This document shows positions 521 to 23,050 of a stretch of 64,000 nucleotides of DNA, piece after piece. The DNA is from Haliotis rubra. Lineage: Eukaryota. The stretch lies in assembly GCF_003918875.1 (NCBI RefSeq), contig NW_025766966.1:1116001-1180000 (forward strand), in the 5' to 3' direction. Both the position numbers and the translations under genes were made by a program. The notes below the pieces were generated by a model. That model did not search any database. It worked only from the letters and a program-made list of their open reading frames with translations, and had not been told where the DNA came from. Within the stretch, counting starts at the first letter, position 1. Every line of letters starts with the position of its first letter.

Positions 521-747
521 TTACTGTCGGAGGAACTCATCACCGTCCTTGTTGCGTACTATATTAACGTGTAAAATCCAGTCAACCTCATTTACCAGAA
601 ACTTTTCCCTTCTTGGATGTACTAAGTTGCCTAAATTCTTTTTTCATAGTATACATTTACACAACAGTAAAGTTCTGTCTGAATGTAGCTGTCAGTAATT
701 CGCGCGTCAGAGCAGCAGTTACCTCCCTTCCCACGGGATCTACCCAC

Positions 748-933
748 CTGCCGGAAACTTTCAGGGCACGACTTCCCCCATGGACGTCGTCGGTGGTTAC
801 GTCGAGTCTGCATCCAGATTCTCTCCAATTGTCAGAAAGGTCCAGACTCTCAAATCCCGGGTTTTTTAATAACTCGAGTCCATGCCCAGATGTTATTAAT
901 ACTATCAGCAGAGCAAGATAGTGAAAGAATCAT
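748..933 (-). pseudogene. Exon 1 of a second GH10 xylanase paralogue (frameshifted; gene would continue off the left edge)
   Basis: Reads YLALLIVLITSGHGLELLKNPGFESLDLSDNWRESGCRLDVTTDDVHGGSRALKVSG then AG|GT, matching exon 1 of the intact gene (GLEVLKNPGFESSDLSDNW...DDVHGGTRAVKVSG AG|GT). The ATG at 933 is out of frame (186 vs 188 nt). Confidence 0.8.
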
Positions 934-8260: not shown

Positions 8261-11200
8261 CTAACCGACGATACCTCCACCTTGGCCATTAAGCGAACAA
8301 CACGTGGCCACAGCCAACACCCCTTCTTCGCCAGTAAACTTATCTTCTCCATTCACGGCAATACACTGTTCTCCATTAGCCTTTGTCCCTAGAAAACAAA
8401 CAGAGAGATAGCATGACACATGGAACGACTCAGTATGCAGACAGGTAATAATAAATCTATTTTCCAAACATCTTTGAAATTCTTTACTTATAAGCATCGG
8501 AATATCTGTACGTCTTCACAGCAGTTGTTATTCAAAATTATCCAACTGGAATTTACGGGTCATCGATGATAGTGGGTGAAGTAGTGTAGGTTTGAACAGG
8601 TTGCTGAACTGAAAGAATCGCAACAAATACGTCCGTAATGCGCGATACCGAGGTTTAAATGTCAAGCTCTCGGAAGTGTCTGGAACTTGTAAAATACTCA
8701 ATAAATTAACTTCAATTCCTACATTTCCTGCTCTATCAGTTATAGGTAATTATTGTTATATGAAACCTCTCGCTGACAGGCGTGGTGGGGTAGCCTAGTG
8801 GTTATAGTGTTCGCTTGTCACGCCGAAGACTCGGGTTCGATTCCCACATGGGTACAATGTGTGAAGCCTATTTCTGGTGTCCCCCGCCGTGATATTGCTT
8901 GAATATTGCTAAAAGCGGAATAAAACTAAACTCACTCACTCACACTCGCTGATAATTCAGAATGGAGGTATATGTTCAAAGACATCATCAAATGTAGAAG
9001 ATGATACATCATTCTTTATCACCTCAACTTCTAAATGCCCAGCAAAGAAATGATCAAATGTAACTGATATGGGATTTTTCTGGAATCTACCTGTTCTTGT
9101 TCGTGATAGTGATATAAGCTTTTGTTTCTTCCGGATTTGAACCATAAGAAACATAACGCTTTCAGTGCGGTGTCCACGATGGTGAATGCCCATGGCTTCA
9201 TATAGAAGGTAAGTCTTTAGCTTCGACAGGAATGATTCATATGAGTAGTATTTAATTTCTTACGCAAGTACCTAGAAACGGGGCCGATGGGGTAGCCTAA
9301 ATCGTCCGCTCGTCACGCTGAAGACCCGGGTTCGATTCCCGACATGCGTATAATGTGTGAAACCCATTTCTGGTGTCCCCTGCGGCATTATTACTGGAAT
9401 GTTGCTAAAAGCGGCGTAAAACAATACTCACTCACTCTAAGAGAAACGTAATTACCTCCAATATATGCCCCAGCTGACTTTCCATAGTTGGCTCGGACGC
9501 TGCATCCCAGTAACTCCGTACCAGGTCCACAGGAGACAGTAGCCTTCTCTCCCTTGATGAGACCACTAGGTTTGGACACCACCGTCTTACAGGTCAGTTT
9601 GGGGGCAGTACAGCAGGCAGCATAAGACCACGTACCTAGAATTGAAATCACTTCTTTAGTTGGACACATTGATTGTATTGGTGTCAACCAATAAACCGCT
9701 TACTTCAAAAAAAAATTAACAAATATTGTTATCATTATTATGTTTGTTGAGAGGATGCGTAAATCATTTTCAGATATTTGCATTTGGAAAGAAACAGAAA
9801 GAGAACATTCAGATAACATTAAGCGGTTTATTTCTATAAATATGTAAGGGCATTAAACTAAGCTTCAACTATATAGTAGCTGCTTCAATAATATTATACT
9901 GACCAACGGTAGTGCCTTCATTTGAGGCAGTGCATCCCTTCTGATTGTCCGAAGGAAACGCTCCTATCATCTCGGAGTCCCATGTCCAGGCCGTACAGCC
10001 TGAATGGGAAGAGGAAGCAAATCGATGTACCATTTAGAATGAATTCATTGAGTAAAAAGTCGAGTCCCGTTGATTTTAAGTCTGGGGACCGGAGTAATTG
10101 TTTGACTTATCCAGAGTTCGAAACATCCGACGAAACGACCTTATTCCTATCAGCTCTGATTCCGGCATGGGTTCTTTCCTCGCCTTCTTAGTCTCAACAG
10201 AGCGAGTAACGACGTCCAGAAGATCACAGTATAATGATGATAAGTAGCGTAGTTACAACATTCTAACAGACATAATTCTCATTCACACTTTTTAATTGAA
10301 CGTTTACCTGTTAGTGTGATATTTTATATACCAACATGTCATTCGTAAAGTTTAAGCATTATACTCAAAGCTTTTAATGTTAAGCCGTCACAAGACCACG
10401 AACGGAAAGCGATGCCATTCTTTGTCCATGGATCATGATTGGTTTCTCTTTGATGCTTCAAAAGTTGTCATAGATCACATACAGTACTGTCAGCTGTGCC
10501 ATTCACAAATTCTGTCAACTCACCTGTGGCTATTTCACCATTCATACAGGTTGTTTCCACTCTGGCATCAACAGACTTAGCAGATGGACCTGAGCTTCTG
10601 TATGCACACTGCATGTTCTTTGACTTACAGCATCGGATGACTGCTTGAACACCTGGTATGGCGAGGTTCAACATAAGTTATGAAAATGACACATGAATCT
10701 GTCAATGAACCGTTTCTGACACTGTTTGGACAAGAAAATGCTACATCACAGCCAAACTATACCAAACAAAAGACTTTACAATTAAATTATAATATATGGA
10801 TTGCAAATGGCATAATGGCAAATATGGATGGTAACAAACATATCGTTTCGATTCCTTTTCTTAATACCTCGATTCCTTTAAGTTAGCCCAATATTTCAAT
10901 AGCCAGACTTAGACACCACACCGTAGTTAATGTCCTGTTAGCCATGGCAGCCCCAAAAAACCTTCAGTAATAATAATAATGATAATAGAAGATGAACATT
11001 GTGTAATTTGGACTATGTGTTTAAGAATTATTATCTAATAGTGATGATTACCGATGTACACTAAATAATTAGCCTTTCCTGACCTACCAATAGTCACAAA
11101 CACATGAAATGGCAAGTCAAGTGTTTGTCTATACAAACACGAGACCACATGATAAAAGTCAAAATAGGGAATCGCATTGGACGTCATTATGGTCATTAGA

Positions 11201-13961
11201 GCGTATAATTCGAAAATTGTCTTTTGTTTTGAAAGCCACCTTTGGTTTTGAGTGTTGCTATTCTGATCAAAATACTTTTGAGCACGTCCCTAGTGTACAG
11301 TACACAACCCTGTGCACTTAAAAGAACCCACGAATTCGTTGGTATATTACCAGATGATGATCACATGAATACGTGCAAACACCTAGTTGCGGGTACAACA
11401 ACGTGCAGTGAACTTGGACAAAGTACTGTAACTATGTGTCCCAGTCCACCCAGTTGTGAATGGGTACCTCGTAAGGATGGGAATGCCACAATATCTCGGT
11501 GCGCCTAGTGGCTGCAAGAGTTGTATGATCATCAGGGAGTTGAGATTGACAATACGAAGTGCCGTTGAGATTGACATCCAGTGAACGAGGGAAAAACAAA
11601 GCGCCTTTGAGCAGAACTGGATATCGGCGCTATACNNNNNNNNNNNNNNNNNNNNNNNNNNNNNNNNNNNNNNNNNNNNNNNNNNNNNNNNNNNNNNNNN
11701 NNNNNNNNNNNNNNNNNNNNNNNNNNNNNNNNNNNNNNNNNNNNNNNNNNNNNNNNNNNNNNNNNNNNNNNNNNNNNNNNNNNNNNNNNNNNNNNNNNNN
11801 NNNNNNNNNNNNNNNNNNNNNNNNNNNNNNNNNNNNNNNNNNNNNNNNNNNNNNNNNNNNNNNNNNNNNNNNNNNNNNNNNNNNNNNNNNNNNNNNNNNN
11901 NNNNNNNNNNNNNNNNNNNNNNNNNNNNNNNNNNNNNNNNNNNNNNNNNNNNNNNNNNNNNNNNNNNNNNNNNNNNNNNNNNNNNNNNNNNNNNNNNNNN
12001 NNNNNNNNNNNNNNNNNNNNNNNNNNNNNNNNNNNNNNNNNNNNNNNNNNNNNNNNNNNNNNNNNNNNNNNNNNNNNNNNNNNNNNNNNNNNNNNNNNNN
12101 NNNNNNNNNNNNNNNNNNNNNNNNNNNNNNNNNNNNNNNNNNNNNNNNNNNNNNNNNNNNNNNNNNNNNNNNNNNNNNNNNNNNNNNNNNNNNNNNNNNN
12201 NNNNNNNNNNNNNNNNNNNNNNNNNNNNNNNNNNNNNNNNNNNNNNNNNNNNNNNNNNNNNNNNNNNNNNNNNNNNNNNNNNNNNNNNNNNNNNNNNNNN
12301 NNNNNNNNNNNNNNNNNNNNNNNNNNNNNNNNNNNNNNNNNNNNNNNNNNNNNNNNNNNNNNNNNNNNNNNNNNNNNNNNNNNNNNNNNNNNNNNNNNNN
12401 NNNNNNNNNNNNNNNNNNNNNNNNNNNNNNNNNNNNNNNNNNNNNNNNNNNNNNNNNNNNNNNNNNNNNNNNNNNNNNNNNNNNNNNNNTCTTCAACAAC
12501 CCATGCATGTCGTAAGAGGCGGGTAACGGGATCGGGTGGTCAGGCTCGCTAACTCCGTTAAAACATGTCCTTGTATCCCAATTGTGTAGATTGATGCTCA
12601 TGATGTTGTTCACTAGATTGTCTGGCTCAGATTCAGTCATGTACAGATCACAGCCATATGTCTGGAATACTGGAATGCGGCGTTTAAAAAACCCCAGTCA
12701 AACAAACTAACAAAAAGCGTACTTTTGAGCATCTGTCCTATGGCGTGTTATGAGTATCATGCTCACCTTGCTTTGACCTCCAACCATTTACTGATTTACA
12801 AGCCACCCGGCCATTATTAACCTCGATGGTCTCTCCATCCCGGTACCACTCTCCGTCCTGAAGAAAACCAGACGTTATTCTTGTAGAAAATCGGTCATTA
12901 CCATTTGCGATTTCACCTTTGTTGCTCTTTGAATTACAGATAAAGCTGGAAAAATGAGTTCGATAGACGATAATCTGAAACACTCTTTGAAATATTTCTT
13001 GACGTTTTAGCGGAACAGTGAGTGAGTGAGTGAGTGAGTGTGGTTTTACGCCGCTTTTAGCAGTATTCCAGCATTATCACGGCAGGGAACACCAGAAATG
13101 CACTTTAACCATAAGGCTACCAACCGTCTCTTTTTCCCGGAACACAGGACTATAAGAAGTTGTCAACTTTACATGCAGATACATATTGTAATTAAATAGT
13201 ATTTATAGATTTCTTCCGTCTCCAGTGGTTCTAATATTTGTACATCGCTGAAAACACATACATCAGTTGTACTAATTTTCACAGTTTGTTTCATTTGATG
13301 GGAAAACAATATAGTTTTCATATGTATGATCGTCTAAAATTAAGACTGGTTATGGACTACCTGCAGAATATGTCTTGAAGTTTTACTAACAAAATATATC
13401 AGAAGAGAGAGAGAGTTCATTTTGCCTCAATTTGAATTGTATAAATTTTGTATATCACATCATACAAGCCACGTGTAGATGGGATTGCAAGACTTCGAAG
13501 TTTAGTGAAACCAACCAGTAGCCAGAATACAAATTTTAAAAAAATGCTAAAACTACTTAATTAGTCAATGCCATTTACCAGCCAACCAAAAAACCAACTA
13601 TCCAACCAACCAACCAGCCAGCCAGCCAACCAGTCAGCCAACCAACCAACCGGTGAGTGAGGTTGGTTTGAGGCTACCTGAATCAGTGTTATAATCATAT
13701 TAGGACCTAATCGTGTCGATTATATATATACCTTGTGATAACCGGAGCAGCTAGTCATCACTTCGTCACTCAGGCAGGAAGCAAATGCAGGCTTGTCATC
13801 TCCGACCTCCGACACCTGGGACGAGCGGGTCACACACTGGAGGTCGTTGTTGTTAGCATTGGATGACATTCTACCAACAATATGCTCGTTGTTATGGGAG
13901 ACTTGAATAGCTTGAGTGATGTGCACGAATGGATCAATGGTTGTTGGGAGTGTCACTTGAT
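8261..13961 (-). CDS. C-terminal exons 13-18 of the xylanase gene: linker plus three PCSK9-CTD/resistin-like modules
   Basis: DLQCVTRSS...FASCLSDEVMTSCSGY...RDGETIE...VACKSVNGWRSKQGVQAVIRCC / MQCAYRSS...TTCMNGEIATGCTAW...GCTASN...WSYAACC / LTCKTVVS...VSCGPGTELLGCSVR...QCIAVN...GVLAVATCC; six Cys per module, each ending in CC. Confidence 0.85.
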
Positions 13962-16900
13962 CTGAAAAGTTCAGGAATTATGTTTGACTTCTTTGAGTGG
14001 CATTTTGAAGTTGGTGTGATGATTCTGATAAACAACGGGAAGAGTTCTATGGATACACTACCTGCTTGATAACGGTGTTAGTACCTACGCTCATATTAAT
14101 AAATAATAATATTTGCATACAACGACTTTATCAATTGTCCCGTTACATGACAATAATGGACCATTTGTCTTGCAACAGTTTAGTATTTTCTAGATAAAAG
14201 TCCTGACTCCGTGGTGTAGAGGTTAGAGCGTCCGCCCGGAGAGCGGAAGGTCGCGGGTTCGATCCCCGACCGCGTCATACCAAAAAACGTTAAAATATGG
14301 TACTTGTTGGTCCCTGCCTGGTGCTCGGCGTTAATGGGTACAACAATGACTGGTTGGCTCGAAGTCAGTATAATGTGTCTGAGTTGGGTATTCATGCTTC
14401 ACTGCGGCATGGTATCTCAGTGGGCTAGCACTATAAAACCAGCTTGAGTCTGGGCTAGTACAAGCAACCGCACATACACATACACACGCATGCACGTTGT
14501 CATATGAGCGAAATATTCTCAAGTACGACGTTAAACCCAATTTCACCTCACCTCACCTAATATCTGTGAGCTTGGTAGCTAGGTACAGACATCGAAGAAT
14601 GTAGATAACATTGTCTGAAATAGTACAGGAGGTTATCCAACCCGTCATAGACATGAACATGCCGTACATTATATCACCACCATGGTATTCTATACTGGTG
14701 CAATATCTTACGTCCATCGCCACTGATGTCCAGGTTAAGCGTTGTATCTGTTTTCCCCAGGTGGAATTCCTGGTACATTATGGACTTCCCCTTGTAGTTC
14801 ACAACGATGTCATAGTCTCCATGGAAACCGTTCACAGTGAAGGACGATCCATCGGAGAGATTTTTAGCTACATGGGTTGACCATTCCTTCTGGACTAGAT
14901 CAAAGTAACGTTGACCAGCAGCGTTCACCTGCAAGAATATACTTTTTGTATTTCAGTATATTTTATCTAGTTTTTGTCCAGTACTAATTAGATGATGTTA
15001 TGAGTGAGTGAGTAAGCGAACTGATTTGGTTTTACGCCGAGTTATACAATGCTATGAAATGATGTATTTCAAGAAAAAAAGTAAATTAGTTATATAGGTT
15101 TAATTAATTGTTTTGAGTGTGTAATATATTCTTTCAGTATTATACTGTGGACATCTGGCTTCACAACTACGCGAATACAAGAATCGAACGGATGACGGGC
15201 GAACGCGGTAGCTGTTTGGCTTTACATTAAAGACCGTTTTGGTTTTTACATGGGTACAATGTATGAGTTATTGCTCAATTGTGTTATCTGTACCTGGTGT
15301 TGAGGTATCGTTGTGGTTTTATGTGTACCATGTCTTGAGATATCTTTGTTAATCTTTCTGTACCTGGTGTTGAGATATCGTTGTGTTATCTGTACCAGGT
15401 GTTGAGATATCGTTATGGTGTTATCTGTACCTGGTGTTGAGATATATTTGTTGTGTTATCTGTACCTGGTGTTAAGATATATTTGTTGTGTTATCTGTAC
15501 CTGGTGTTGAGACATATTTGTTGTGTTATCTGTACCTGGTGTTGAGACATATTTGTTGTGTTATCTGTACCTGGTGTTGAAATATCTTTGTTGTGTTATG
15601 TGTACCTGGTGTTGAGATATCGTTATGGTGTTATCTGTACCTGGTGTTGAGATATATTTGTTGTGTTATCTGTACCTGGTGTTAAGATATATTTGTTGTG
15701 TTATCTGTACCTGGTGTTGAGATATCGTTGTGGTGTTATCTGTACCTGGTGTTGAGATATGGGAATGATATTTGTATCTGGTGTTGAGATATATTTGTTG
15801 CGTTATATGTACCTAGTGTTGAGATATGGGTATGATATTTGTACCTGGTGTTGAGATATATTTGTTGTGTTATCTGTACCCGGTGTTGAAATATATTTGT
15901 TGTGTTATCTGTACCTGGTTTGATATATGGTCTGTTTCATCAGTAGACGTGTTCTTAAATCAACATTAATTTATCTTATTTATCCCTTTAAATACGGCCC
16001 GATTTTTACCTTTACACATATCTTACAGAGTGACATTTTACATTGACAAATATTCAGTAACAATACCATTTAAGAATATATTAAAAGATCGAGTTAATTA
16101 TGCTCACATAGAAGTTGTATCCATTGATAAGAGCGGCGTAAGGGCTTTTCATTTGATGATCCCAGAATCCCCAGAAAATGACGCCCTCCACTGCTGGGTG
16201 ACTGAAGTATGTCCTCAGAGCCCAGTCATACCAGTCCGCCCGGATGTTCTCGTCATGGTGCACCAGGTCCATCTCGGTAATCCACAGAGGTAGTCCCACA
16301 GACCCCAGTTTGTCCAGACGCCTCTGAAATATTATGTTGCCAATAGATATATATCGTGTCGTCAACGTTTTACTGATGTAACATTAAATACGACACCCGT
16401 TCGTTCTCAAAATGTCATTGATATTTATAGTACGTTTACATACAGTTAGTGGAAATGTAAAAGAGTACTTATATGTAGTAATGGTACTTGGCAATGTTAT
16501 GTTTGTCATTACGCAGTAGAATGAGAATGATTATTGACAATAATATAAACGTTAGCTAGAAAAGGCCTACTTTCAGAAGTGTGGGATCTGGAGGCGTATA
16601 GTCTCTGAAGTGACTCTGTAGACCAAGACCTCCCAGGCCAACATTGGCCTTTTTGAACTCTTTAGCCTGATCGACGTAAGCCTGGAAATACATATATCAT
16701 CACATACACACATATACCAAACAGATTCCATTGGGTGTAATAGGCAAAACAGTGGTGAAAAGTATATGAATAAATCAATGAAAGTCCGTGATGACACCAG
16801 GTGTTCGCGAAAAAGTGAAGTATGTCGCAGTTAACTCACACAATGTCCATACACAGCAAAGCACCAAACAATACTTGAACTATATACTGCGGGCGGGGCA

Positions 16901-19900
16901 ATTGTGTTGAGAATGGGGAGATGGTATGTAAATACAAACACATGGTATGTACAGTTCTCATGCTAGTTGTTATATAAGGGGAGTAAATATATTGTGTTAA
17001 GAGCAAACTCATGAGGTTCATTCCTAGCGTAGGGTATTTACCAGGATATTGGCATTGGCGACTCCATATTTATCAACACTGAAAGCTCTACCTACCCGAC
17101 ATCTCATACTTTCATCTTCATCCATATATGACACCGAAGGATACAATTTTATACCTTCATTTTATCCTTTAGACTACATGTAGATGGAGGTACTGCAAAT
17201 TTACATATTGACGTTGTTGTCATGGTGATTATTACGTGACACACATGGTAGAGTGAGGGCTACGATCATCATGTTTACGAAAAGTATTGTCAGCATACAT
17301 CAGTGACGGCTCCCACTGCGACGACATCGTAGTCGTTGAGAAAGAGCGTGGGCACCGGATCAGCCTTGTGTACCATATCGTAGATCTTCTCAGAGTACCG
17401 GGGATCGCCTGTTTTCTCCTCATATAACTGGCCATGGAGAAGTTCGTTGTTCACGTCCCAATGATCCAGTCTATAGCAGCAACATAACAATTGGTGAATG
17501 AGTGTTAGGGTTTAGGAATACTGTTAGCAATACTCCAGCAATAGGGGACACTAGAGATGGGCTTCATACGTTGTACCCACGTGGGGAATCGAACGGTTCT
17601 ACCACTAGGGTACCCCACCGCCCCTCAAAAATGATATTATACTTTCAAATATATTTTTATTCTCCTATCACCATCTGTTAATGGACACTAAATAGACGTA
17701 AGCACATGTTTTCTCCTATATAACTGACCATGGAAAAGTTCATTTTTTCAGATTCCAATGATCTAATCTAAAGTACAAAAAGTGATATTATACTTTCAAA
17801 TATATTCATTGATTCAGTCTATTAATCAGGCCTAAATAGACATGTATGAATAATTGGCTTCGTGTGTTCATTGTATATTTGATTTTACTGTTATTATTTT
17901 AAACGCGGTCATGGCGAATGATGCAGTTCACTTACATCCCCTTTGTGATGCCAGTCATAAATTTGACTCTGTCTGCAATGGCTGTTTTCAGCATCGGACC
18001 GTTTAAGGCTTCAACCCAGCTAGGCGAGCTCCCTGGAACCCCCCAGAACATATTGTGTCCTCGAACCTTCATGCTGAAAAATACCATACCAGCTGTGATA
18101 ACTTCCCTGGAACCCCCAGAACATATTGTGTCCTCGAACCTTCATGCTGAAAAATATCATACCAGCTGTTATAACTTCCCTGGAACCCCCAGAACATATT
18201 GTGTGCTCGAACCTTCATGCTGAAAAATATCATACCAGCTGTTATAACTTCCTTGGAACCCCCAGAACATATTGTGTGCTCGAACCTTCGTGCTGAAAAA
18301 CATCAGCTGTTTGTAACCCCCCTCTCAGCTGTTGTAACTTCTCTGATAATGGTAAAATAACACTGATCCGCATTTGTAAGACACGTACCCATGTTGTTTA
18401 AGCACCTTCACACCATTTGTAGCAGTTGTGTAGTCAGGATGGTCCTGTAGAAGACGGATAGCTACTATAATGTTTATCAAATATTTTGTCATAGTAAGTC
18501 TTGCATACATATTTGTGATGGTAATTTTTCGGAGAATTACTTTGCATGCAGAAATCTAATCCAAATAATGGACAATAATTCGATTTTACTTTCAGAAGGA
18601 ACAAATGAAGACATGAACAGACCTTGGTGCCTCTGTTATACTTCCACTTGAAGGACCCTGCTGTCGCCCAGTTAAACATGTCATACACAAAGTTTTGATA
18701 TTGTTTGTAACCAGGGTCGGTCATATAGTCCTCGTTTATCACTGACCCAAATCCAAAGAGATGTCTTTTGTGGTCAATCTGTAACTCAGAGAAGTACATA
18801 AAATGTCCTGAAGTACATATATCAAAGACATTCAACACTTGGGAATATACACTTTTTCGCTTCCGAATATTTTATGACTATAACAAGTGTACCATAGGTA
18901 TATGCAAAGAGGTTGTATACTGTATATATTTATATTATACTTCATCGAAATTGAGTATATTGAGTATTGGATGTTATCATATTTAAACAACATGAACAGA
19001 ATTATTATATCTAACCTTAATTTCAATATCAGCTGGGTTGAATGAAGATGAATGTGTCACTCTGTAACACATGATGATCCATGTACGTTTTAGTCACATG
19101 TTTGTTCAAGACAAGTAAATATAACACAGAAATGTCTCATATTGTGGTCCACACTATAAAAAACTTTTGTCTTCACATACATTCCATATCAAAAATATTA
19201 ATGCAATGCTGGTTCTTGATTAATCGTTTGAAATATATTCACACATTTTCAACCTTCAGGTCACTTGCCGGGATTCGACCACTTTTTAACAGTATGTCTT
19301 ACCTTAAGTTGAATTACTTTATGGTAATATGTTCAGCCCTTAAAAGTCATATAACTTGCAAATATGAATATCCATAGGCACAAGGCGTTTCGCTTTATAG
19401 TTCGTTCAGACTGAGTAATACATGTGGTGAGTATTGTATGACAAAACGACTATCAAACGGATTACTGCAAAGGTTCTGCTTGCAATTGGTTCGGGTATGT
19501 TCAGAGCAGAACGAGGTTAACAGTAGACAGGCTTACTGAACATTGATGTTGTTTTTCCTAATCTTCTGTATTCTGGCATCAGCCTCGGCCTTCCAACTCA
19601 TGTCCTCGTCCACCGTCAGGAGAGAAGCGTCGTCAACGATGAAGTCGATTCCTGCATCGGGGCCTTGGAAGTACAGGTTCGCCTTGCTGAAGTCTGGAGG
19701 TGAATGGAGAATAGTCATTACAGCATGACATATATTCAAGTATATGTCAATGGAAATCTTTATTGCACACCTTAAAAGCGGAAGCTTAATCACAGTTCAA
19801 GATCATGTCTGGAATTTGTCTACGAGAGATACAGATTGGCCTTATTGATGTCTTCTGGAGACTCAGACATTATTATATTAGGGTTGCGTTAATAGAAGCA

Positions 19901-22900
19901 ACAAAGCGATTCATGGTATCAGATATTACAAGTACCGCTCCATGAAATGTATGTGTTTGCCAAATACATGGACACACCCCTTGCATACACAATGTCTTGT
20001 GCTCCGTTTGTTGACTGAAAAATCGTTTAATTGACCGCCAGCCAAACATGAAAATATGATGATTCTGACTGACACTAGATATTGCTCGATGGTCAGTTGG
20101 TCAGTTGGTCAGTTGAGCTCATTATGTACGGTGAATAAATGGAGCAGCAGCACAAGCATGCTGGTATCCGTAGCTTCGCACACTTGCACCCAAGTGGACA
20201 TACACTTATGGGTCTTTGGCTTGACTTGACAATGTGGTCAAGCTACGAATTCGCCTCAACGATTACATGGAAAATGACAGTGCTGAATTTGTTTGTGTTA
20301 GTTTGTTGAGTGTCGTTCCAGCTATATGGCGGCGGTCTTAAAATAATATAGTCTGGACTAGACACTCCAGTGATCAACATCATTAGCATGGATCTACACA
20401 ATTTGGATGCGATGACATCTGTCATGCAACCATGTCAGCAAACATGACCAAGCGATCACGTCAGTCATGTGCAGACCAAGTCTAACCCTGATCGTCACGG
20501 GTGAATATCTATATTAGTTGGACTTACTTTTCAAAGGAGCGGTGAAATCCCCGTCTAGGCTGAACCATCCATTGGCAGACTGAACAAATGGGTGTTGAGC
20601 GATGTCGTAATAATCCGTTTTACCTACGTAGGGCAAAAATCGTCATTGGGTTAGGATATTTAGCATCGTGTCTCATAAAACACTCTTATTATTTACAGTA
20701 ATAAGCATGCATGGGCGGATCCAGAGACCCATCACCACCAGCGCCAACCGTCTCCCCCCAAATATTTCCCCTGAGGAGCATTTCCTCCTGACCATTAGGC
20801 TTCATATTTTATCTGCAATCCCACCCTCCCTATAATCCTGCATCCGCCCCTGAGATGGTAATCGCTATTTAGACATTTATATGACCTATGGAATCTATTT
20901 GATATTGGAGACAGATCATTGCTCACTGACGTTGGTATGCTGTAAATAACCTTCTTACTTAAACTCTTTGAATGTCGCTTATTCAGATCACATATCTATG
21001 AAAACTTAATGATAATATATATTTTTTCATTCCGCCAATCAGAAGTAAGCAGAACGTTAAAGTAGCAACCTCTGTTGCTGATATAAGACTAAATAGTTGA
21101 ACATACTGTGATCAAAACCTATATATATATATCTTAAATACTTATGGTGGCGAAGTATGACGAATCGTGACGGATCAGTGCCGAAAACAGAAGTGCCTTT
21201 TCCTCCCGCCACCACCCCGTTCTTTTTTCGCTTGTCCCCAACCTTAATTACACTTTGAATGCATTTTCAAAACTACTTGAAAGTGGAATTAATTTTGTAG
21301 TTTTGCTTCCCACCGAGTAGAATTCTGGGGCTCAAACTTCGTAAACCAACGTAGAGCGAAAAGTGTCCAGTCATCAGAGTGAGTGTGTGAGTGCAGCTTT
21401 GAATAGCATGTGACGTCACATTGCAGGATGACTGCTTGATATCGGAGGATAGCTCTACACCATCCTTGTCTTCGACGCTTACCAGTTTGTTGACACCCAC
21501 AACCAATGGGTATGATGAAAACTGATCAAGGCGAATCAGGGATTAGAACCTTAGACCACCCGTTTGAGACCTGAATAGAACAGAGATAGATTCTTCGCAC
21601 TACAGTACATACCGTCATCAGCCCATGTATATGCAATGGTGATCTTGATGGTCTGGAACAACGTTCCTGTGTGGTCATTCAGCTGTTTAACACTGGAGGT
21701 ATAGGAATAGCGGCCACCCGGCTGCAGCTGGACATTCTGAGCAGGACCTTGGTACGTCTTTGTTCTGAAACGCATATTACTTGATATTTACTTCACACAT
21801 ATTAGAGATTAAACGACCCCAACAGACAGTTCTTGCATAATTATGATCTTGAGATATATTTTAAGTATTTAGTACTGTAACGTGATAACATTGTTTGCTT
21901 TACATTGCATTTCATACGACCTAGTCTGATCCGAACTACATCGACTTATATTCTACATCATGCTGTGACTTGTTAAAGTTTCCGAAACAATTAGTGTTGT
22001 TCTTTATGAAAAGATTTACGACCAGATTATAAACTAAATAACACCAACATCCCAGACTTGATCATTTGTCCAAACGGATGATTATTGAATGCCTATATCC
22101 TCTTTCGCCAAGGAGAACAGTGATAACATTCTTAGCACAGCTAATGTGACCAGAGGATCATTTCACAAACATTTTGAGACAAGTGGAACATCCTTGTCGA
22201 AGACATCTCGCTTAATAATCAGATTCACAGAACACTATATTTCACTAACCTGATATTACCTCTGATAACTGCACATATATATGGAAAGTGTTTTGTCGGT
22301 TTTACTACTGTAAACATTTACAAAGAAAACACTCATGACGAACTGTTGTTGTTTTTTGAGCACTTGCTGTGTATTTTAGTCTAAAAATTAATGGTCACTT
22401 TGAGCTCTTTATGACTGAAGCTTACTCGTGCATGCGTGCGTGCGTGCGTGCGTGCGAGCGTGTGAAAAAATGACCTCGTACAAATGTCTCTACATTTGAT
22501 CCGTATACCTAATTCTTCCGTTCCAAATATTGAACCTTATCGCGAATATGATAATGCAATCAAGGTTCCTCAGACACTGACCTTGACATATTTAACCATT
22601 GCAGTTTATATTTAACTTCAATAAACAACTTTAATGCATACAAAGTACAATGGAAATATCTCTAAACTTCCTTTTCAGGTAAGAATTCTTGTAACTAGTG
22701 TACGTGTAGAACGGGACCTTTGTCATAGTCAAATAGTATTGTTATAATATATATTTATTATATCGCATTAGGCTGACCATTAACTCGTGTATGTAGGCGA
22801 TAAGATATACAGATTTCCTAATGTCAGATAAGCCGATTACCTCTGTGTCAATATTGAATTACCTTCCGGAGACTTTGACAGCACGAGTCCCACCATGAAC

Positions 22901-23050
22901 ATCATCAGTGATGCTCACAATGTTGAAACCCCATCCATTCCAGTTGTCTGACAGATCTGAACTCTCAAACCCTGGGTTTTTCAGCACCTCGAGTCCAGAT
23001 ACAATCTGGACAAGAACTAGAGCTAGAGCAAGAGCACTGCCTCGAATCAT
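8261..23050 (-). CDS. Secreted GH10 endo-1,4-beta-xylanase: signal peptide + CBM4/9-like module + GH10 + PCSK9-C-terminal-like Cys-rich triple module (18 exons, 852 aa)
   Basis: Hand-spliced exons (- strand): 23050-22863, 21764-21613, 20623-20528, 19693-19537, 19061-19016, 18778-18623, 18444-18389, 18073-17936, 17470-17299, 16681-16571, 16323-16108, 14928-14712, 13961-13732, 12857-12767, 10652-10524, 9999-9904, 9635-9456, 8388-8261. All introns GT-AG with consistent phases; 2559 nt, no internal stop. Signal peptide MIRGSALALALVLVQIVSG; CBM motif LKNPGFE; GH10 motifs RGHNMFW, WDVNNE (acid/base), LFLNDY, GLGLQSHF, LPLWITEMD (nucleophile), GVIFWGFWD. Confidence 0.92.
8778..8945 (+). mobile_element. 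SINE family A copy (another at 9280-9437)
   Basis: Same head, body and tail as 2943-3110, inside xylanase intron 17. Confidence 0.85.
11420..11635 (+). mobile_element. SINE fragment with L2-like 3' end
   Basis: ccacccagttgtgaatgggtacc core and aaagcgcctttgagc...ggcgctata end; truncated by the gap. Confidence 0.5.
11636..12489. other. Assembly gap (xylanase intron 14)
   Basis: N run. Confidence 1.
14205..14558 (+). mobile_element. tRNA-derived SINE family C (Meta-SINE-like, (CACCT)n tail)
   Basis: tRNA head then cgtcataccaaaa..cgttaaaatatggtac; near-identical copy at 35995-36372(-), partial at 33220-33340(-). Confidence 0.8.
15280..15920. repeat. ~35-37-bp minisatellite in xylanase intron 11
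   Basis: Unit gtgttatctgtacctggtgttgagatatatttgtt, roughly 17-18 variant copies. Confidence 0.9.
18031..18310. repeat. 73-bp tandem repeat (4 units) spanning the exon 8 acceptor of the xylanase gene
   Basis: Acceptor-plus-exon-start copies begin at 18073, 18146, 18219 and 18292. Confidence 0.9.

What the first reader, a model, noticed from the sequence alone, without database searches (positions are those of the whole stretch)
8261..23050. Animal GH10 xylanase fused to a complete PCSK9-type C-terminal Cys-rich domain
Seen: the last GH10-region exon (14928-14712) ends at a phase-1 donor, not a stop, and six more in-phase exons add a linker and three 6-Cys modules ending VIRCC, YAACC and VATCC. 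Established: this spacing is that of the PCSK9 C-terminal (resistin-like M1-M3) domain. As I recall the human sequence, module 1 aligns closely: CAPDEELLSCSSF..RRGERME...VCRAHN...GVYAIARCC versus CLSDEVMTSCSGY..RDGETIE...ACKSVN...GVQAVIRCC here. That domain is best known attached to a subtilisin protease. Inference: exon shuffling moved it onto a glycoside hydrolase, where it may bind algal polysaccharide, mucus or a gut-surface receptor. That would suggest an older, general binding role for the fold. I do not know of a characterised enzyme with this architecture but cannot exclude automated database entries.
Basis: partly seen in the sequence, partly recalled or inferred. Interest (0 to 1): 0.9.

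Follow-up and report, generated by a model that had tools for sequence, protein, structure and literature searches.

The report
Abalone xylanase carrying a PCSK9-type domain
A real, expressed abalone-type digestive xylanase gene ends in the same three-part cysteine-rich domain known from the human cholesterol regulator PCSK9; the fusion is old and widespread in molluscs and a brachiopod and is already in sequence databases, but its function has not been studied.

Summary
An 18-exon minus-strand gene (23050-8261) has GT-AG at all 17 introns and gives one 852-aa ORF: signal peptide, CBM_4_9, GH10 with both catalytic Glu, a small beta domain, a conserved linker, then three 6-Cys modules. The N gap (11636-12489) lies inside intron 14 and no exon is missing. 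RNA-like contigs splice 14712|13961, 13732|12857 and across the gap intron exactly as modelled.

The Cys-rich part is a true homologue of the PCSK9 C-terminal domain:
- One exon alone hits PCSK9 in the PDB (E 3e-11).
- A profile built only from protease-attached domains scores the window protein at 113 bits.
- All 18 Cys columns are shared.
- The AF2 model of the 91%-identical Haliotis asinina orthologue matches 7anq_A at Z 28, rmsd 2.0 A.

It is not unique. The same architecture is in automated entries for over 15 molluscs and Lingula. These form one clade on both the catalytic-domain tree and the Cys-domain tree. Exon structure is conserved, and one phase-1 intron is shared with PCSK9 itself. 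The domain is under purifying selection (dN/dS 0.14).

Function is untested. I infer a non-catalytic binding module. No paper in the searched library describes it. Interest is moderate.

The parts
22863..23050 (-). Exon 1: ATG at 23050, signal peptide (res 1-19), start of the CBM_4_9-like domain; phase-2 donor
   Evidence: orthologues hit CBM_4_9 at 64 bits
21613..21764 (-). Exon 2 (res 63-114), CBM_4_9
   Evidence: same intron positions in H. asinina and Lingula
20528..20623 (-). Exon 3 (res 114-146), CBM_4_9
19537..19693 (-). Exon 4 (res 146-198), end of the CBM and the helix leading into GH10
19016..19061 (-). Exon 5 (res 198-213), 46-nt micro-exon
   Evidence: conserved in H. asinina and Lingula
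18623..18778 (-). Exon 6 (res 214-265), GH10
18389..18444 (-). Exon 7 (res 266-284), GH10
17936..18073 (-). Exon 8 (res 284-330), GH10; preceded by 73-bp tandem copies of its own acceptor
17299..17470 (-). Exon 9 (res 330-387), GH10; WDVNNE motif with the acid/base Glu339
   Evidence: (Glyco_hydro_10 19.5 bits for the exon alone)
16571..16681 (-). Exon 10 (res 388-424), GH10
16108..16323 (-). Exon 11 (res 425-496), GH10; WITEMD motif with the nucleophile Glu441
   Evidence: (20.8 bits for the exon alone)
14712..14928 (-). Exon 12 (res 497-569): small beta domain that is the C-terminus of the short animal GH10s; ends in a phase-1 donor instead of a stop
   Evidence: short GH10s end at res 564-569; spliced to exon 13 in RNA contigs
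13732..13961 (-). Exon 13 (res 569-645): conserved linker plus the first half of module 1 (Cys 611, 631, 640)
   Evidence: (PCSK9_C1)
12767..12857 (-). Exon 14 (res 646-676): middle of module 1 (Cys 665)
11636..12489 (.). Assembly gap (N), wholly inside intron 14; no coding sequence is missing
10524..10652 (-). Exon 15 (res 676-719): end of module 1 (CC 683-684) and start of module 2
   Evidence: (loose end)
9904..9999 (-). Exon 16 (res 719-751): middle of module 2; its 5' intron (phase 1) is shared with PCSK9 genes
9456..9635 (-). Exon 17 (res 751-811): end of module 2 (CC 758-759) and most of module 3
   Evidence: PCSK9_C1 30.7 bits; PCSK9 in the PDB, E 3e-11
8261..8388 (-). Exon 18 (res 811-852): end of module 3 (CC 840-841), Gly-rich tail, stop TAG 8263-8261

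Best explanation
Shown. This is one intact, expressed gene for a secreted multidomain endo-beta-1,4-xylanase of an abalone (Haliotis-type) genome. Its parts in order are a signal peptide, CBM_4_9, a GH10 catalytic barrel with both catalytic glutamates, a small beta domain, a conserved ~40-residue linker, and a C-terminal domain.

That C-terminal domain is a genuine homologue of the PCSK9 C-terminal (Cys-rich, resistin-like) domain. It has three tandem six-Cys beta-sandwich modules in a pseudo-threefold arrangement.

The fusion arose once, before chitons, gastropods and bivalves diverged, and probably before the mollusc-brachiopod split. A multi-exon, phase-1-bounded domain cassette was joined to the last exon of a complete short GH10 gene. 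The fusion has been kept under purifying selection ever since.

The cassette is an ancient bilaterian extracellular module. It also occurs free and in other multidomain proteins in hemichordates, and on the subtilase that became PCSK9.

Inferred, about 0.4-0.5 likely. In the xylanase the domain is a non-catalytic ligand-binding part of the enzyme body rather than a loose tag. It would hold the enzyme on a polysaccharide or glycoprotein surface in the gut or digestive gland, much as carbohydrate-binding modules do. No binding was tested.
For: Gene and transcript.
- 18 exons, 17 GT-AG introns, one 852-aa ORF.
- RNA-like contigs of two runs are spliced exactly 14712|13961 and 13732|12857 and run on into exon 15. 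DNA-like runs of the same study are colinear with the introns.
- Relatives are represented by 2.5-2.6-kb contigs holding uninterrupted 841-846-aa ORFs.

Homology of the domain.
- Exon 17 alone hits PCSK9 chains only, E 3e-11.
- A profile of 44 such domains against the PDB hits PCSK9 only, E 5e-35, end to end.
- A profile built from protease-attached domains alone scores the window protein at 113.5 bits.
- 18 of 18 Cys columns are shared.
- The orthologue's domain model has pLDDT 93.7.
- Foldseek's top 30 are all PCSK9, and VIA-align gives Z 28.3, rmsd 2.0 A over 216 of 222 residues.
- Pfam gives CBM_4_9 + Glyco_hydro_10 + PCSK9_C1 + PCSK9_C3 above gathering score in seven homologues.

One old fusion.
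- Domain-bearing GH10s form a clade on a catalytic-domain-only tree (SH-aLRT 98).
- Their Cys domains form one side of a 98% branch on the domain tree.
- Intron positions and phases are identical in H. asinina and nearly so in Lingula.
- Short GH10s end at residue 564-569, which is the exon-12 donor.
- One phase-1 intron in module 2 is shared with Saccoglossus, Ptychodera and Xenopus genes.

Selection and structure.
- dN/dS is 0.14 for the domain, against 0.054 for GH10 and 0.37 for the CBM.
- The full-length model has pLDDT 91 and pTM 0.86, with the linker at pLDDT 78-95. This suggests a fixed domain arrangement.

Binding-type context.
- In a hemichordate the domain sits with C-type lectin, F5/8C, CUB and Kringle modules.
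- The nearest non-homologous AlphaFold DB cluster is named 'Lectin' (TM 0.72).
Against: No ligand, activity, localisation or mature protein size is known for any member, so the function is inference only.

- All documented partners of the PCSK9 domain are proteins (annexin A2, CAP1, HLA-C, LDLR repeats; reviewed in PMC9113161), not glycans.
- The lectin-like matches are fold analogies at 9-16% identity with automatic names.
- The structural tests used the H. asinina orthologue (91% identical in this domain), because a spliced window protein cannot be passed to the tools.
- Only contig-level RNA evidence over exons 11-18 was obtained, not a full-length cDNA.
- Lingula and one chiton paralogue sit on long unresolved branches, so a single origin including brachiopods is likely but not proven.
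- Inter-domain contacts could not be inspected. Only pTM was returned.
Confidence: 0.8

Rival explanations
1. The domain works as in PCSK9, as a protein-protein docking or trafficking module. It would bind a cell-surface receptor or escort protein of digestive-gland cells, so that the enzyme, alone or with bound substrate, is taken up or routed to endosomes and lysosomes, where much molluscan digestion takes place.
For: The domain is homologous to the PCSK9 domain over all three modules. Every documented ligand of that domain is a protein, and it is required for lysosomal routing of the LDLR complex (PMC9113161). The domain is under strong purifying selection.
Against: The His-rich, pH-sensing character of PCSK9 module 2 is absent: there is 1 His in the whole domain. 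Identity to PCSK9 is only 27-30%. The acidic S-x-x-S...GDD-type loops conserved in the invertebrate domains are not conserved in PCSK9. No partner is known.
Confidence: 0.25
2. The domain has no ligand. It would be a disulfide-rich stabilising or protease-resistance cap, or a maturation segment that is cleaved off in the linker, so that the working enzyme is the ~60-kDa short form.
For: The protein's 18 cysteines are all in this domain. Most molluscan GH10s work without it, as short forms of about 565 aa. A few members of the long-form clade lack it.
Against: dN/dS of 0.14 over about 240 residues, retention for more than 500 Myr, and conserved non-cysteine motifs are more than a removable segment needs. 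The linker is conserved and modelled with pLDDT 78-95. No dibasic or other obvious processing site was noticed in the linker.
Confidence: 0.15
3. The fusion is a gene-model artefact: two neighbouring genes, a short GH10 and a free PCSK9-like Cys-rich protein, read together.
For: Short GH10s end exactly where exon 12 ends, and free Cys-domain proteins exist in hemichordates.
Against: Exon 12 has no stop codon, only a consensus phase-1 donor. RNA-like contigs join exons 12-13-14-15, with zero RNA depth just past the donor (bin 14563-14643). There are end-to-end orthologous models in over 15 species and intron-free 2.5-kb transcript-like contigs. No signal peptide or ATG-led exon lies upstream of exon 13.
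Confidence: 0.02

Closest known systems
PCSK9 C-terminal domain (CHRD / V-domain; Pfam PCSK9_C1, C2, C3; e.g. PDB 7anq, 2qtw)
   Same: Both have three tandem modules with 6 Cys each. All 18 Cys columns align. Profile homology runs end to end (E 5e-35). The predicted fold superposes at Z 28, rmsd 2.0 A. Both sit at the C-terminus of a secreted enzyme behind a phase-1 intron. One phase-1 intron inside module 2 is at the identical position.
   Different: It is attached to a GH10 glycoside hydrolase, not an S8 subtilase. It is not His-rich (1 His, against 14 in human PCSK9 according to PMC9113161). Identity is only 27-30%. Module 2 is not recognised by the PCSK9_C2 model at threshold. The other intron positions differ, and the GH10 type shares three with the free hemichordate genes instead. 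It has conserved acidic loop motifs that PCSK9 lacks.
Short molluscan and other animal GH10 xylanases (about 565 aa, CBM_4_9 + GH10; e.g. RefSeq 'endo-1,4-beta-xylanase 1-like', Rapana venosa 'cellulase')
   Same: They share the N-terminal CBM_4_9, the GH10 barrel, the catalytic motifs and the small C-terminal beta domain. They belong to the same animal GH10 radiation.
   Different: They stop at the position of the exon-12 donor (res 564-569) and have no linker or Cys-rich domain. The long forms are a separate clade.
Free 'PCSK9-like' Cys-domain proteins of hemichordates (Saccoglossus XP_006822820.1, Ptychodera, Glandiceps)
   Same: They have the same three-module domain with 18 shared Cys. 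Identity is 35-38%. They share four phase-1 introns with the GH10-attached domain, one of them only approximately placed.
   Different: They consist of a signal peptide plus the domain only, with no enzyme attached. On the domain tree they group with the protease-attached domains, not with the GH10 ones.
Resistin / RELM head domain (PDB 1rgx, 1rh7)
   Same: A single module resembles the resistin head, a disulfide-rich six-stranded sandwich. The pseudo-trimer mimics the resistin trimer.
   Different: The match here is only weak (Z 3.6 over 65-70 residues). Resistin trimerises three separate chains through a coiled coil. No sequence-level hit was found.

Membership tests
PCSK9 C-terminal Cys-rich domain (PCSK9_C1/C2/C3) | Significant profile-level sequence similarity over the whole domain | tested here: met
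   The window protein scores 113.5 bits against a profile of S8-attached domains only. Exon 17 alone gives E 3e-11 against PCSK9 chains. The family profile gives E 5e-35, positions 5-237 against 7anq_A 3-230.
PCSK9 C-terminal Cys-rich domain (PCSK9_C1/C2/C3) | Three tandem modules, each with six cysteines at conserved positions | tested here: met
   Each of M1 610-684, M2 685-759 and M3 760-843 has 6 Cys. 18 of 18 Cys columns are shared with Xenopus, Ambystoma, Dipodomys and Ptychodera proteins.
PCSK9 C-terminal Cys-rich domain (PCSK9_C1/C2/C3) | Pseudo-threefold assembly of three six-stranded beta sandwiches | tested here: met
   Tested on the AF2 model of the H. asinina orthologue (91% identical in this domain): pLDDT 93.7, 18 strands; Foldseek TM 0.77/0.86; VIA Z 28.3, rmsd 2.0 A. 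The window's own spliced sequence could not be submitted.
PCSK9 C-terminal Cys-rich domain (PCSK9_C1/C2/C3) | Pfam gathering thresholds for C1, C2 and C3 | tested here: inconclusive
   Homologues pass C1 (45-77 bits, cutoff 31.3) and mostly pass C3 (cutoff 26.7). C2 is absent or at 16.8 bits, below its 26.1 cutoff; module 2 is covered by second stretches of C1/C3. For the window only single exons could be scanned, and the best is C1 at 30.7 bits.
PCSK9 C-terminal Cys-rich domain (PCSK9_C1/C2/C3) | Disulfide connectivity 1-6, 2-5, 3-4 within each module (as stated in PMC9113161) | not testable with these tools
   Model coordinates are not returned. The claim rests only on the conserved Cys positions.
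PCSK9 C-terminal Cys-rich domain (PCSK9_C1/C2/C3) | Histidine-rich module 2 (the 'H' of CHRD) | tested here: not met
   There is 1 His in the whole domain and none in M2. This is a trait of mammalian PCSK9 rather than of the fold.
PCSK9 (the protein: proprotein convertase of family S8) | Inhibitor_I9 prodomain and Peptidase_S8 catalytic domain upstream of the Cys-rich domain | tested here: not met
   The upstream part is CBM_4_9 + Glyco_hydro_10. The protein is not a PCSK9 orthologue, although database fragments of this family are auto-named 'PCSK9-like'.
Glycoside hydrolase family 10 | Profile match to Glyco_hydro_10 | tested here: met
   Orthologues score 85-163 bits. Window exons 9 and 11 alone score 19.5 and 20.8 bits (cutoff 22.1 for a whole protein). 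The catalytic part is 95% identical to H. asinina P0057.
Glycoside hydrolase family 10 | Acid/base Glu (..N-E..) and nucleophile Glu (..T-E-x-D..) | tested here: met
   WDVNNE at 334-339 and WITEMD at 438-443. Both Glu are invariant in 30 long-form proteins. That these motifs carry the catalytic pair is established knowledge of GH10.
Glycoside hydrolase family 10 | Xylanase activity | not testable with these tools
Resistin / RELM | N-terminal coiled coil trimerising three single-module chains | tested here: not met
   This is a single chain with three modules and no coiled coil. The structural match is only Z 3.6.

The most novel reading that the evidence does not exclude
The PCSK9-type domain may be an ancient bilaterian module for capture and endolysosomal routing. 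Under this reading the mollusc and brachiopod xylanases use it as PCSK9 does. It would bind a surface receptor of digestive-gland cells, for example an LDLR-family receptor, so that enzyme and bound algal polysaccharide are internalised for intracellular digestion. The cholesterol-regulating role of PCSK9 would then be a vertebrate re-use of an old digestive uptake mechanism, and the invertebrate proteins would offer a tractable way to identify the long-sought routing partner of the domain.
Probability: 0.08. Interest if true: 0.8.

Novelty: new variant of a known kind. Interest (0 to 1): 0.5.

Why it matters
For PCSK9 biology, the finding shows that the C-terminal domain is not a vertebrate or protease-specific invention. 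This is the part of PCSK9 that is least understood mechanistically and that is needed for LDL-receptor degradation. It is an old, mobile extracellular module with at least four contexts: free, on a multidomain lectin-type protein, on a subtilase, and on a xylanase. Residues conserved across these contexts could point to its ancestral ligand site.

For carbohydrate-active enzymes, a whole clade of animal GH10s carries a 240-residue accessory domain that is strongly conserved and uncharacterised. If it binds glycans, it would be a new carbohydrate-binding module family.

On the practical side, fragments of these genes are auto-named 'PCSK9-like' in mollusc annotations, which is misleading.

Tried and rejected
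- The window's own protein is not in the protein collections (best match 91%, H. asinina). Pfam scans of whole proteins and structure work therefore used orthologues. The window's spliced sequence was tested only locally and exon by exon.
- Two large hits of the exon search, P0003 and P0031, are Sushi-repeat proteins. I rejected them as false positives of a Cys-rich query.
- A word-indexed search with the domain alignment found only 4 proteins, which was too insensitive for a phyletic survey.
- The ESM Atlas look-up gave only its own mollusc cluster plus unrelated bacterial clusters below the trust level.
- AlphaFold DB cluster hits ('Lectin', H-type lectin and many bacterial proteins, at 9-16% identity) and the TgPLP1 APC-beta domain (Z 6.2) are fold analogies. 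I did not use them as evidence of homology.
- RNA runs X1-X4 hold words from the 1197-nt stretch (exon 12, intron 12, exon 13) but not from exon 13. They were probably drawn in by the intronic repeat, so I did not use them.
- Literature searches found no description of this architecture. The searches were PCSK9 + xylanase, PF18459/PCSK9_C1, PCSK9 + invertebrate + resistin, abalone xylanase, and mollusc GH10. The molluscan GH survey PMC7560691 does not mention PCSK9.
- I considered and rejected a mis-joined gene model (see the rival explanations).
Full report
**1. The gene**

On the minus strand between 23050 and 8261 I assembled 18 exons from the stop-free stretches and their splice sites. Every intron is GT...AG. 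The phases are 2,1,1,2,0,0,2,2,0,0,0,1,0,1,1,1,1. The joined sequence is one ORF of 852 aa ending at TAG 8263-8261.

- Exon 12 is 14928-14712 and ends in a phase-1 donor.
- Six further exons follow in phase.
- The three modules end VIRCC, YAACC and VATCC.
- The protein is 852 aa long.

**2. The assembly gap**

The N run 11636-12489 lies between exon 14 (donor after 12767) and exon 15 (acceptor before 10652). Three independent checks show that it is purely intronic.
- Aligned with ten homologues, the protein is continuous across residues 675/676, with no insertion or deletion.
- The H. asinina orthologous gene has a single 914-nt intron at the same codon position and phase.
- An RNA-like contig that covers exons 12, 13 and 14 runs on, beyond exon 14, with the first 30 bases of exon 15, differing at one base (loose end before 12764).

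**3. Transcript evidence**

Two small RNA-like runs of 'organism A' (X25, X26) hold contigs of 579 and 1298 nt that skip exactly 13962-14711 (750 nt, CT..AC on the plus strand). They also skip an 874-nt stretch placed at 12857-13730. That placement fits equally one base to the right, as the tool notes, which is intron 13 of my model (12858-13731).

The 1298-nt contig extends 153 nt beyond exon 12 on the upstream side, towards the GH10 exons. It extends 604 nt beyond exon 14 on the downstream side, enough for exons 15-18 and a short 3' UTR.

Two large DNA-like runs of the same study (X15, X16) show no such joints and are colinear with the introns. RNA depth is zero just past the exon-12 donor (bin 14563-14643), so no read-through or short isoform is visible in these runs.

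The contigs differ from the window by about 1-2%. They share these differences with the DNA runs, so they represent another haplotype or individual of the same locus.

**4. What the Cys-rich part is**

- Exon 17 alone (59 aa) finds only PCSK9 chains in the PDB (E 3e-11). It aligns in register with module 3 and more weakly with modules 1 and 2.
- Exon by exon, Pfam gives PCSK9_C1 and C3.
- The spliced window domain aligns over about 240 residues with Xenopus and Ambystoma PCSK9 at 30% identity.
- It scores 113.5 bits against a profile that I built only from subtilase-attached domains.
- A profile of 44 GH10-attached and free domains hits nothing in the PDB but PCSK9, at E 5e-35 and end to end.
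- All 18 cysteine columns are shared with vertebrate and hemichordate proteins.
- The AF2 model of residues 600-848 of the H. asinina orthologue (91% identical to the window in this part) is confident (pLDDT 93.7, pTM 0.89). It has 18 strands, six per module.
- Foldseek's first 30 PDB hits for that model are all PCSK9. VIA-align gives Z 28.3 and rmsd 2.0 A over 216 of the 222 residues of 7anq_A. Resistin follows only at Z 3.6.

The second refutation criterion, no profile or structural match, is also not met.

Differences from PCSK9:
- The domain has only one histidine.
- Module 2 is not recognised by PCSK9_C2 at threshold.
- It has conserved acidic loop motifs absent from PCSK9.

**5. The rest of the protein**

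Homologues give CBM_4_9 (res ~20-165) and Glyco_hydro_10 well above threshold. The window has WDVNNE (334-339) and WITEMD (438-443). Both Glu are invariant in 30 long-form proteins, so nothing argues against catalytic competence.

Residues 497-568 (exon 12) form a small all-beta domain in the full-length model. No Pfam family claims it.

The full-length model of the orthologue has pLDDT 91 and pTM 0.86. The linker reaches pLDDT 78-95 and contains a strand, and it is conserved in sequence. This points to a fixed multidomain body rather than a floppy tether. I could not inspect the contacts.

**6. A family, not a one-off**

An exhaustive HMMER search with exon 17 returned 39 representatives. Local BLAST showed that nine of them are colinear with the window protein through both GH10 and the Cys domain.

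Word-indexed searches then listed the same four-domain architecture, with precomputed Pfam hits, in these taxa:
- Abalones: Haliotis rufescens, H. asinina, H. rubra.
- Other gastropods: Patella, Aplysia, Elysia, Lymnaea, Biomphalaria, Bulinus, Bradybaena, Candidula, Pomacea, Babylonia. A Batillaria entry carries only CBM_4_9, GH10 and PCSK9_C1.
- Bivalves: Mactra, Mya.
- A chiton: Liolophura.
- A brachiopod: Lingula.

The nearest proteins are H. asinina P0057 (91%) and H. rufescens P0056 (85%). The window therefore comes from an abalone or a very close relative.

Several relatives are known only as 2.5-2.6-kb contigs that hold the whole ORF without introns. These are transcript-like.

Most molluscan GH10s are short (about 565 aa) and lack the domain.

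**7. Origin**

On a tree of the catalytic domain alone (121 rows), the domain-bearing proteins fall into one clade (SH-aLRT 98). It contains 41 with the domain and 5 without, the latter being losses or truncated models. Lingula and one chiton paralogue sit on long unresolved branches just outside.

On a tree of the Cys domain alone, a 98% branch separates all GH10-attached domains, Lingula included, from all deuterostome ones. The deuterostome side holds the subtilase-attached, free and multidomain forms. Both trees were built with the quick search.

The 17 intron positions and phases are identical in H. asinina. In Lingula 16 are present with the same phases, and the one inside module 1 is missing. 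Short GH10s end at residues 564-569, exactly where exon 12 ends.

Within the domain:
- The phase-1 intron before the third Cys of module 2 is at the same alignment column in the window, H. asinina, Lingula, the free Saccoglossus gene, the Ptychodera subtilase gene and Xenopus PCSK9.
- Two more phase-1 introns, and probably a third, are shared with the free Saccoglossus gene only.
- PCSK9-type genes have two phase-0 introns of their own.
- In both fusions the domain is entered through a phase-1 intron.

Together this fits capture of a pre-existing multi-exon cassette at the DNA level. That is exon shuffling in the broad sense, happening once in an early lophotrochozoan. It does not show descent from the protease-attached copy.

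**8. Selection**

Nei-Gojobori estimates for the window against the H. asinina orthologue:

| Region | dN/dS |
|---|---|
| GH10 | 0.054 |
| Cys domain | 0.141 |
| - module 1 | 0.09 |
| - module 2 | 0.11 |
| - module 3 | 0.16 |
| Linker | 0.30 |
| CBM | 0.37 |
| Exon-12 domain | 0.38 |

The Cys domain is thus the second most constrained part of the protein.

**9. How it probably works**

What is shown is a secreted, probably active xylanase with an integral, conserved, disulfide-locked pseudo-trimeric C-terminal domain. What the domain binds is not known.

I favour a ligand-binding accessory role on a polysaccharide or glycoprotein surface, at about 0.4-0.5. The reasons are these:
- Accessory modules of secreted glycoside hydrolases are usually substrate-targeting.
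- In a hemichordate the domain keeps company with lectin-type modules.
- Threefold pseudo-symmetric beta folds are common lectin architectures, and the nearest AlphaFold DB cluster is labelled 'Lectin'. This is an analogy only.

The main rival (0.25) is a protein-docking or trafficking role like that of PCSK9, whose known partners are all proteins (PMC9113161). A purely stabilising or removable segment (0.15) fits the conservation less well.

**10. Novelty**

The architecture is plainly visible in automated database entries. Some fragments are even auto-named 'PCSK9-like'. The gene is therefore one more member of a catalogued but uncharacterised family.

I found no paper in the searchable library that mentions the combination or the Pfam families concerned. 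The genome-wide survey of molluscan GH families does not mention PCSK9, and the domain types listed in its domain-architecture legend do not include this one (PMC7560691). Subscription-only literature could not be searched.

**11. Limits**

- The structural and whole-protein Pfam tests were done on orthologues.
- RNA support is from assembled contigs of two runs and covers exons 11-18, not the whole mRNA.
- Both trees used the quick search, and no AU test was run.
- Organism names of the runs are coded.
- No functional experiment exists for any family member.

Noticed in passing
window 18031-18310 (intron 7 / start of exon 8): A 73-bp unit holding the polypyrimidine tract, the acceptor AG and the first ~40 nt of exon 8 is repeated in tandem. 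The acceptor motif TTTTTCAGCATGAAGG occurs at 18227, 18154 and 18081. tblastn sees the pseudo-copies at 59-79% identity. Intron 7 of the H. asinina orthologue is only 190 nt, against 315 nt here. Another first-stage note (s1-354023) covers the same repeat.
   Followed up: partly
window 660-929, minus strand: This is the first exon of a second, tandem GH10-type gene. It encodes a signal peptide plus a CBM start (LELLKNPGFESLDLSDNW...KVSGR followed by a donor). It is 45% identical to residues 7-109 of the studied protein. It lies about 7.3 kb downstream on the same strand, and the rest of the gene runs off the window's start.
   Followed up: partly
window 14158-14562 (intron 12); also 13024-13104: A very high-copy interspersed repeat. 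Summed contig depth in the DNA-like runs reaches 10^5-10^6 there, against about 15-60 for the flanks. It probably explains why unrelated runs, other species and a peat metagenome share words with this stretch.
   Followed up: no
window 15249-15936 (intron 11): A minisatellite. A unit of roughly 100 nt is repeated about 6-7 times. It shows up as repeated HNKYISTPGTDNTT-like strings in all three minus-strand frames. GC skew is strongly positive in 14001-16000.
   Followed up: no
proteins P0011 (H. rubra XP_046546510.1), P0176 (Biomphalaria), P0007 (Pomacea XP_025077929.1): [quoted passage not shown] P0007 lies on the same contig as the Pomacea GH10 long forms, and P0011 on the same contig as H. 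rubra long forms. They are probably fragments of GH10 long-form genes and not PCSK9 relatives.
   Followed up: partly
protein P0002 (H. asinina isoform X2, 714 aa): This predicted isoform belongs to the other Haliotis long-form paralogue group. It lacks the part matching window residues ~259-387, which includes the acid/base Glu region of GH10, but keeps the CBM and the full Cys domain. It could be a non-catalytic splice form or a model error.
   Followed up: no
protein P0028 (Glandiceps talaboti XP_077990235.1, 1467 aa): In this hemichordate protein the PCSK9-type domain follows C-type lectin, Kringle, F5/8C and CUB modules. This is a fourth context for the domain.
   Followed up: partly
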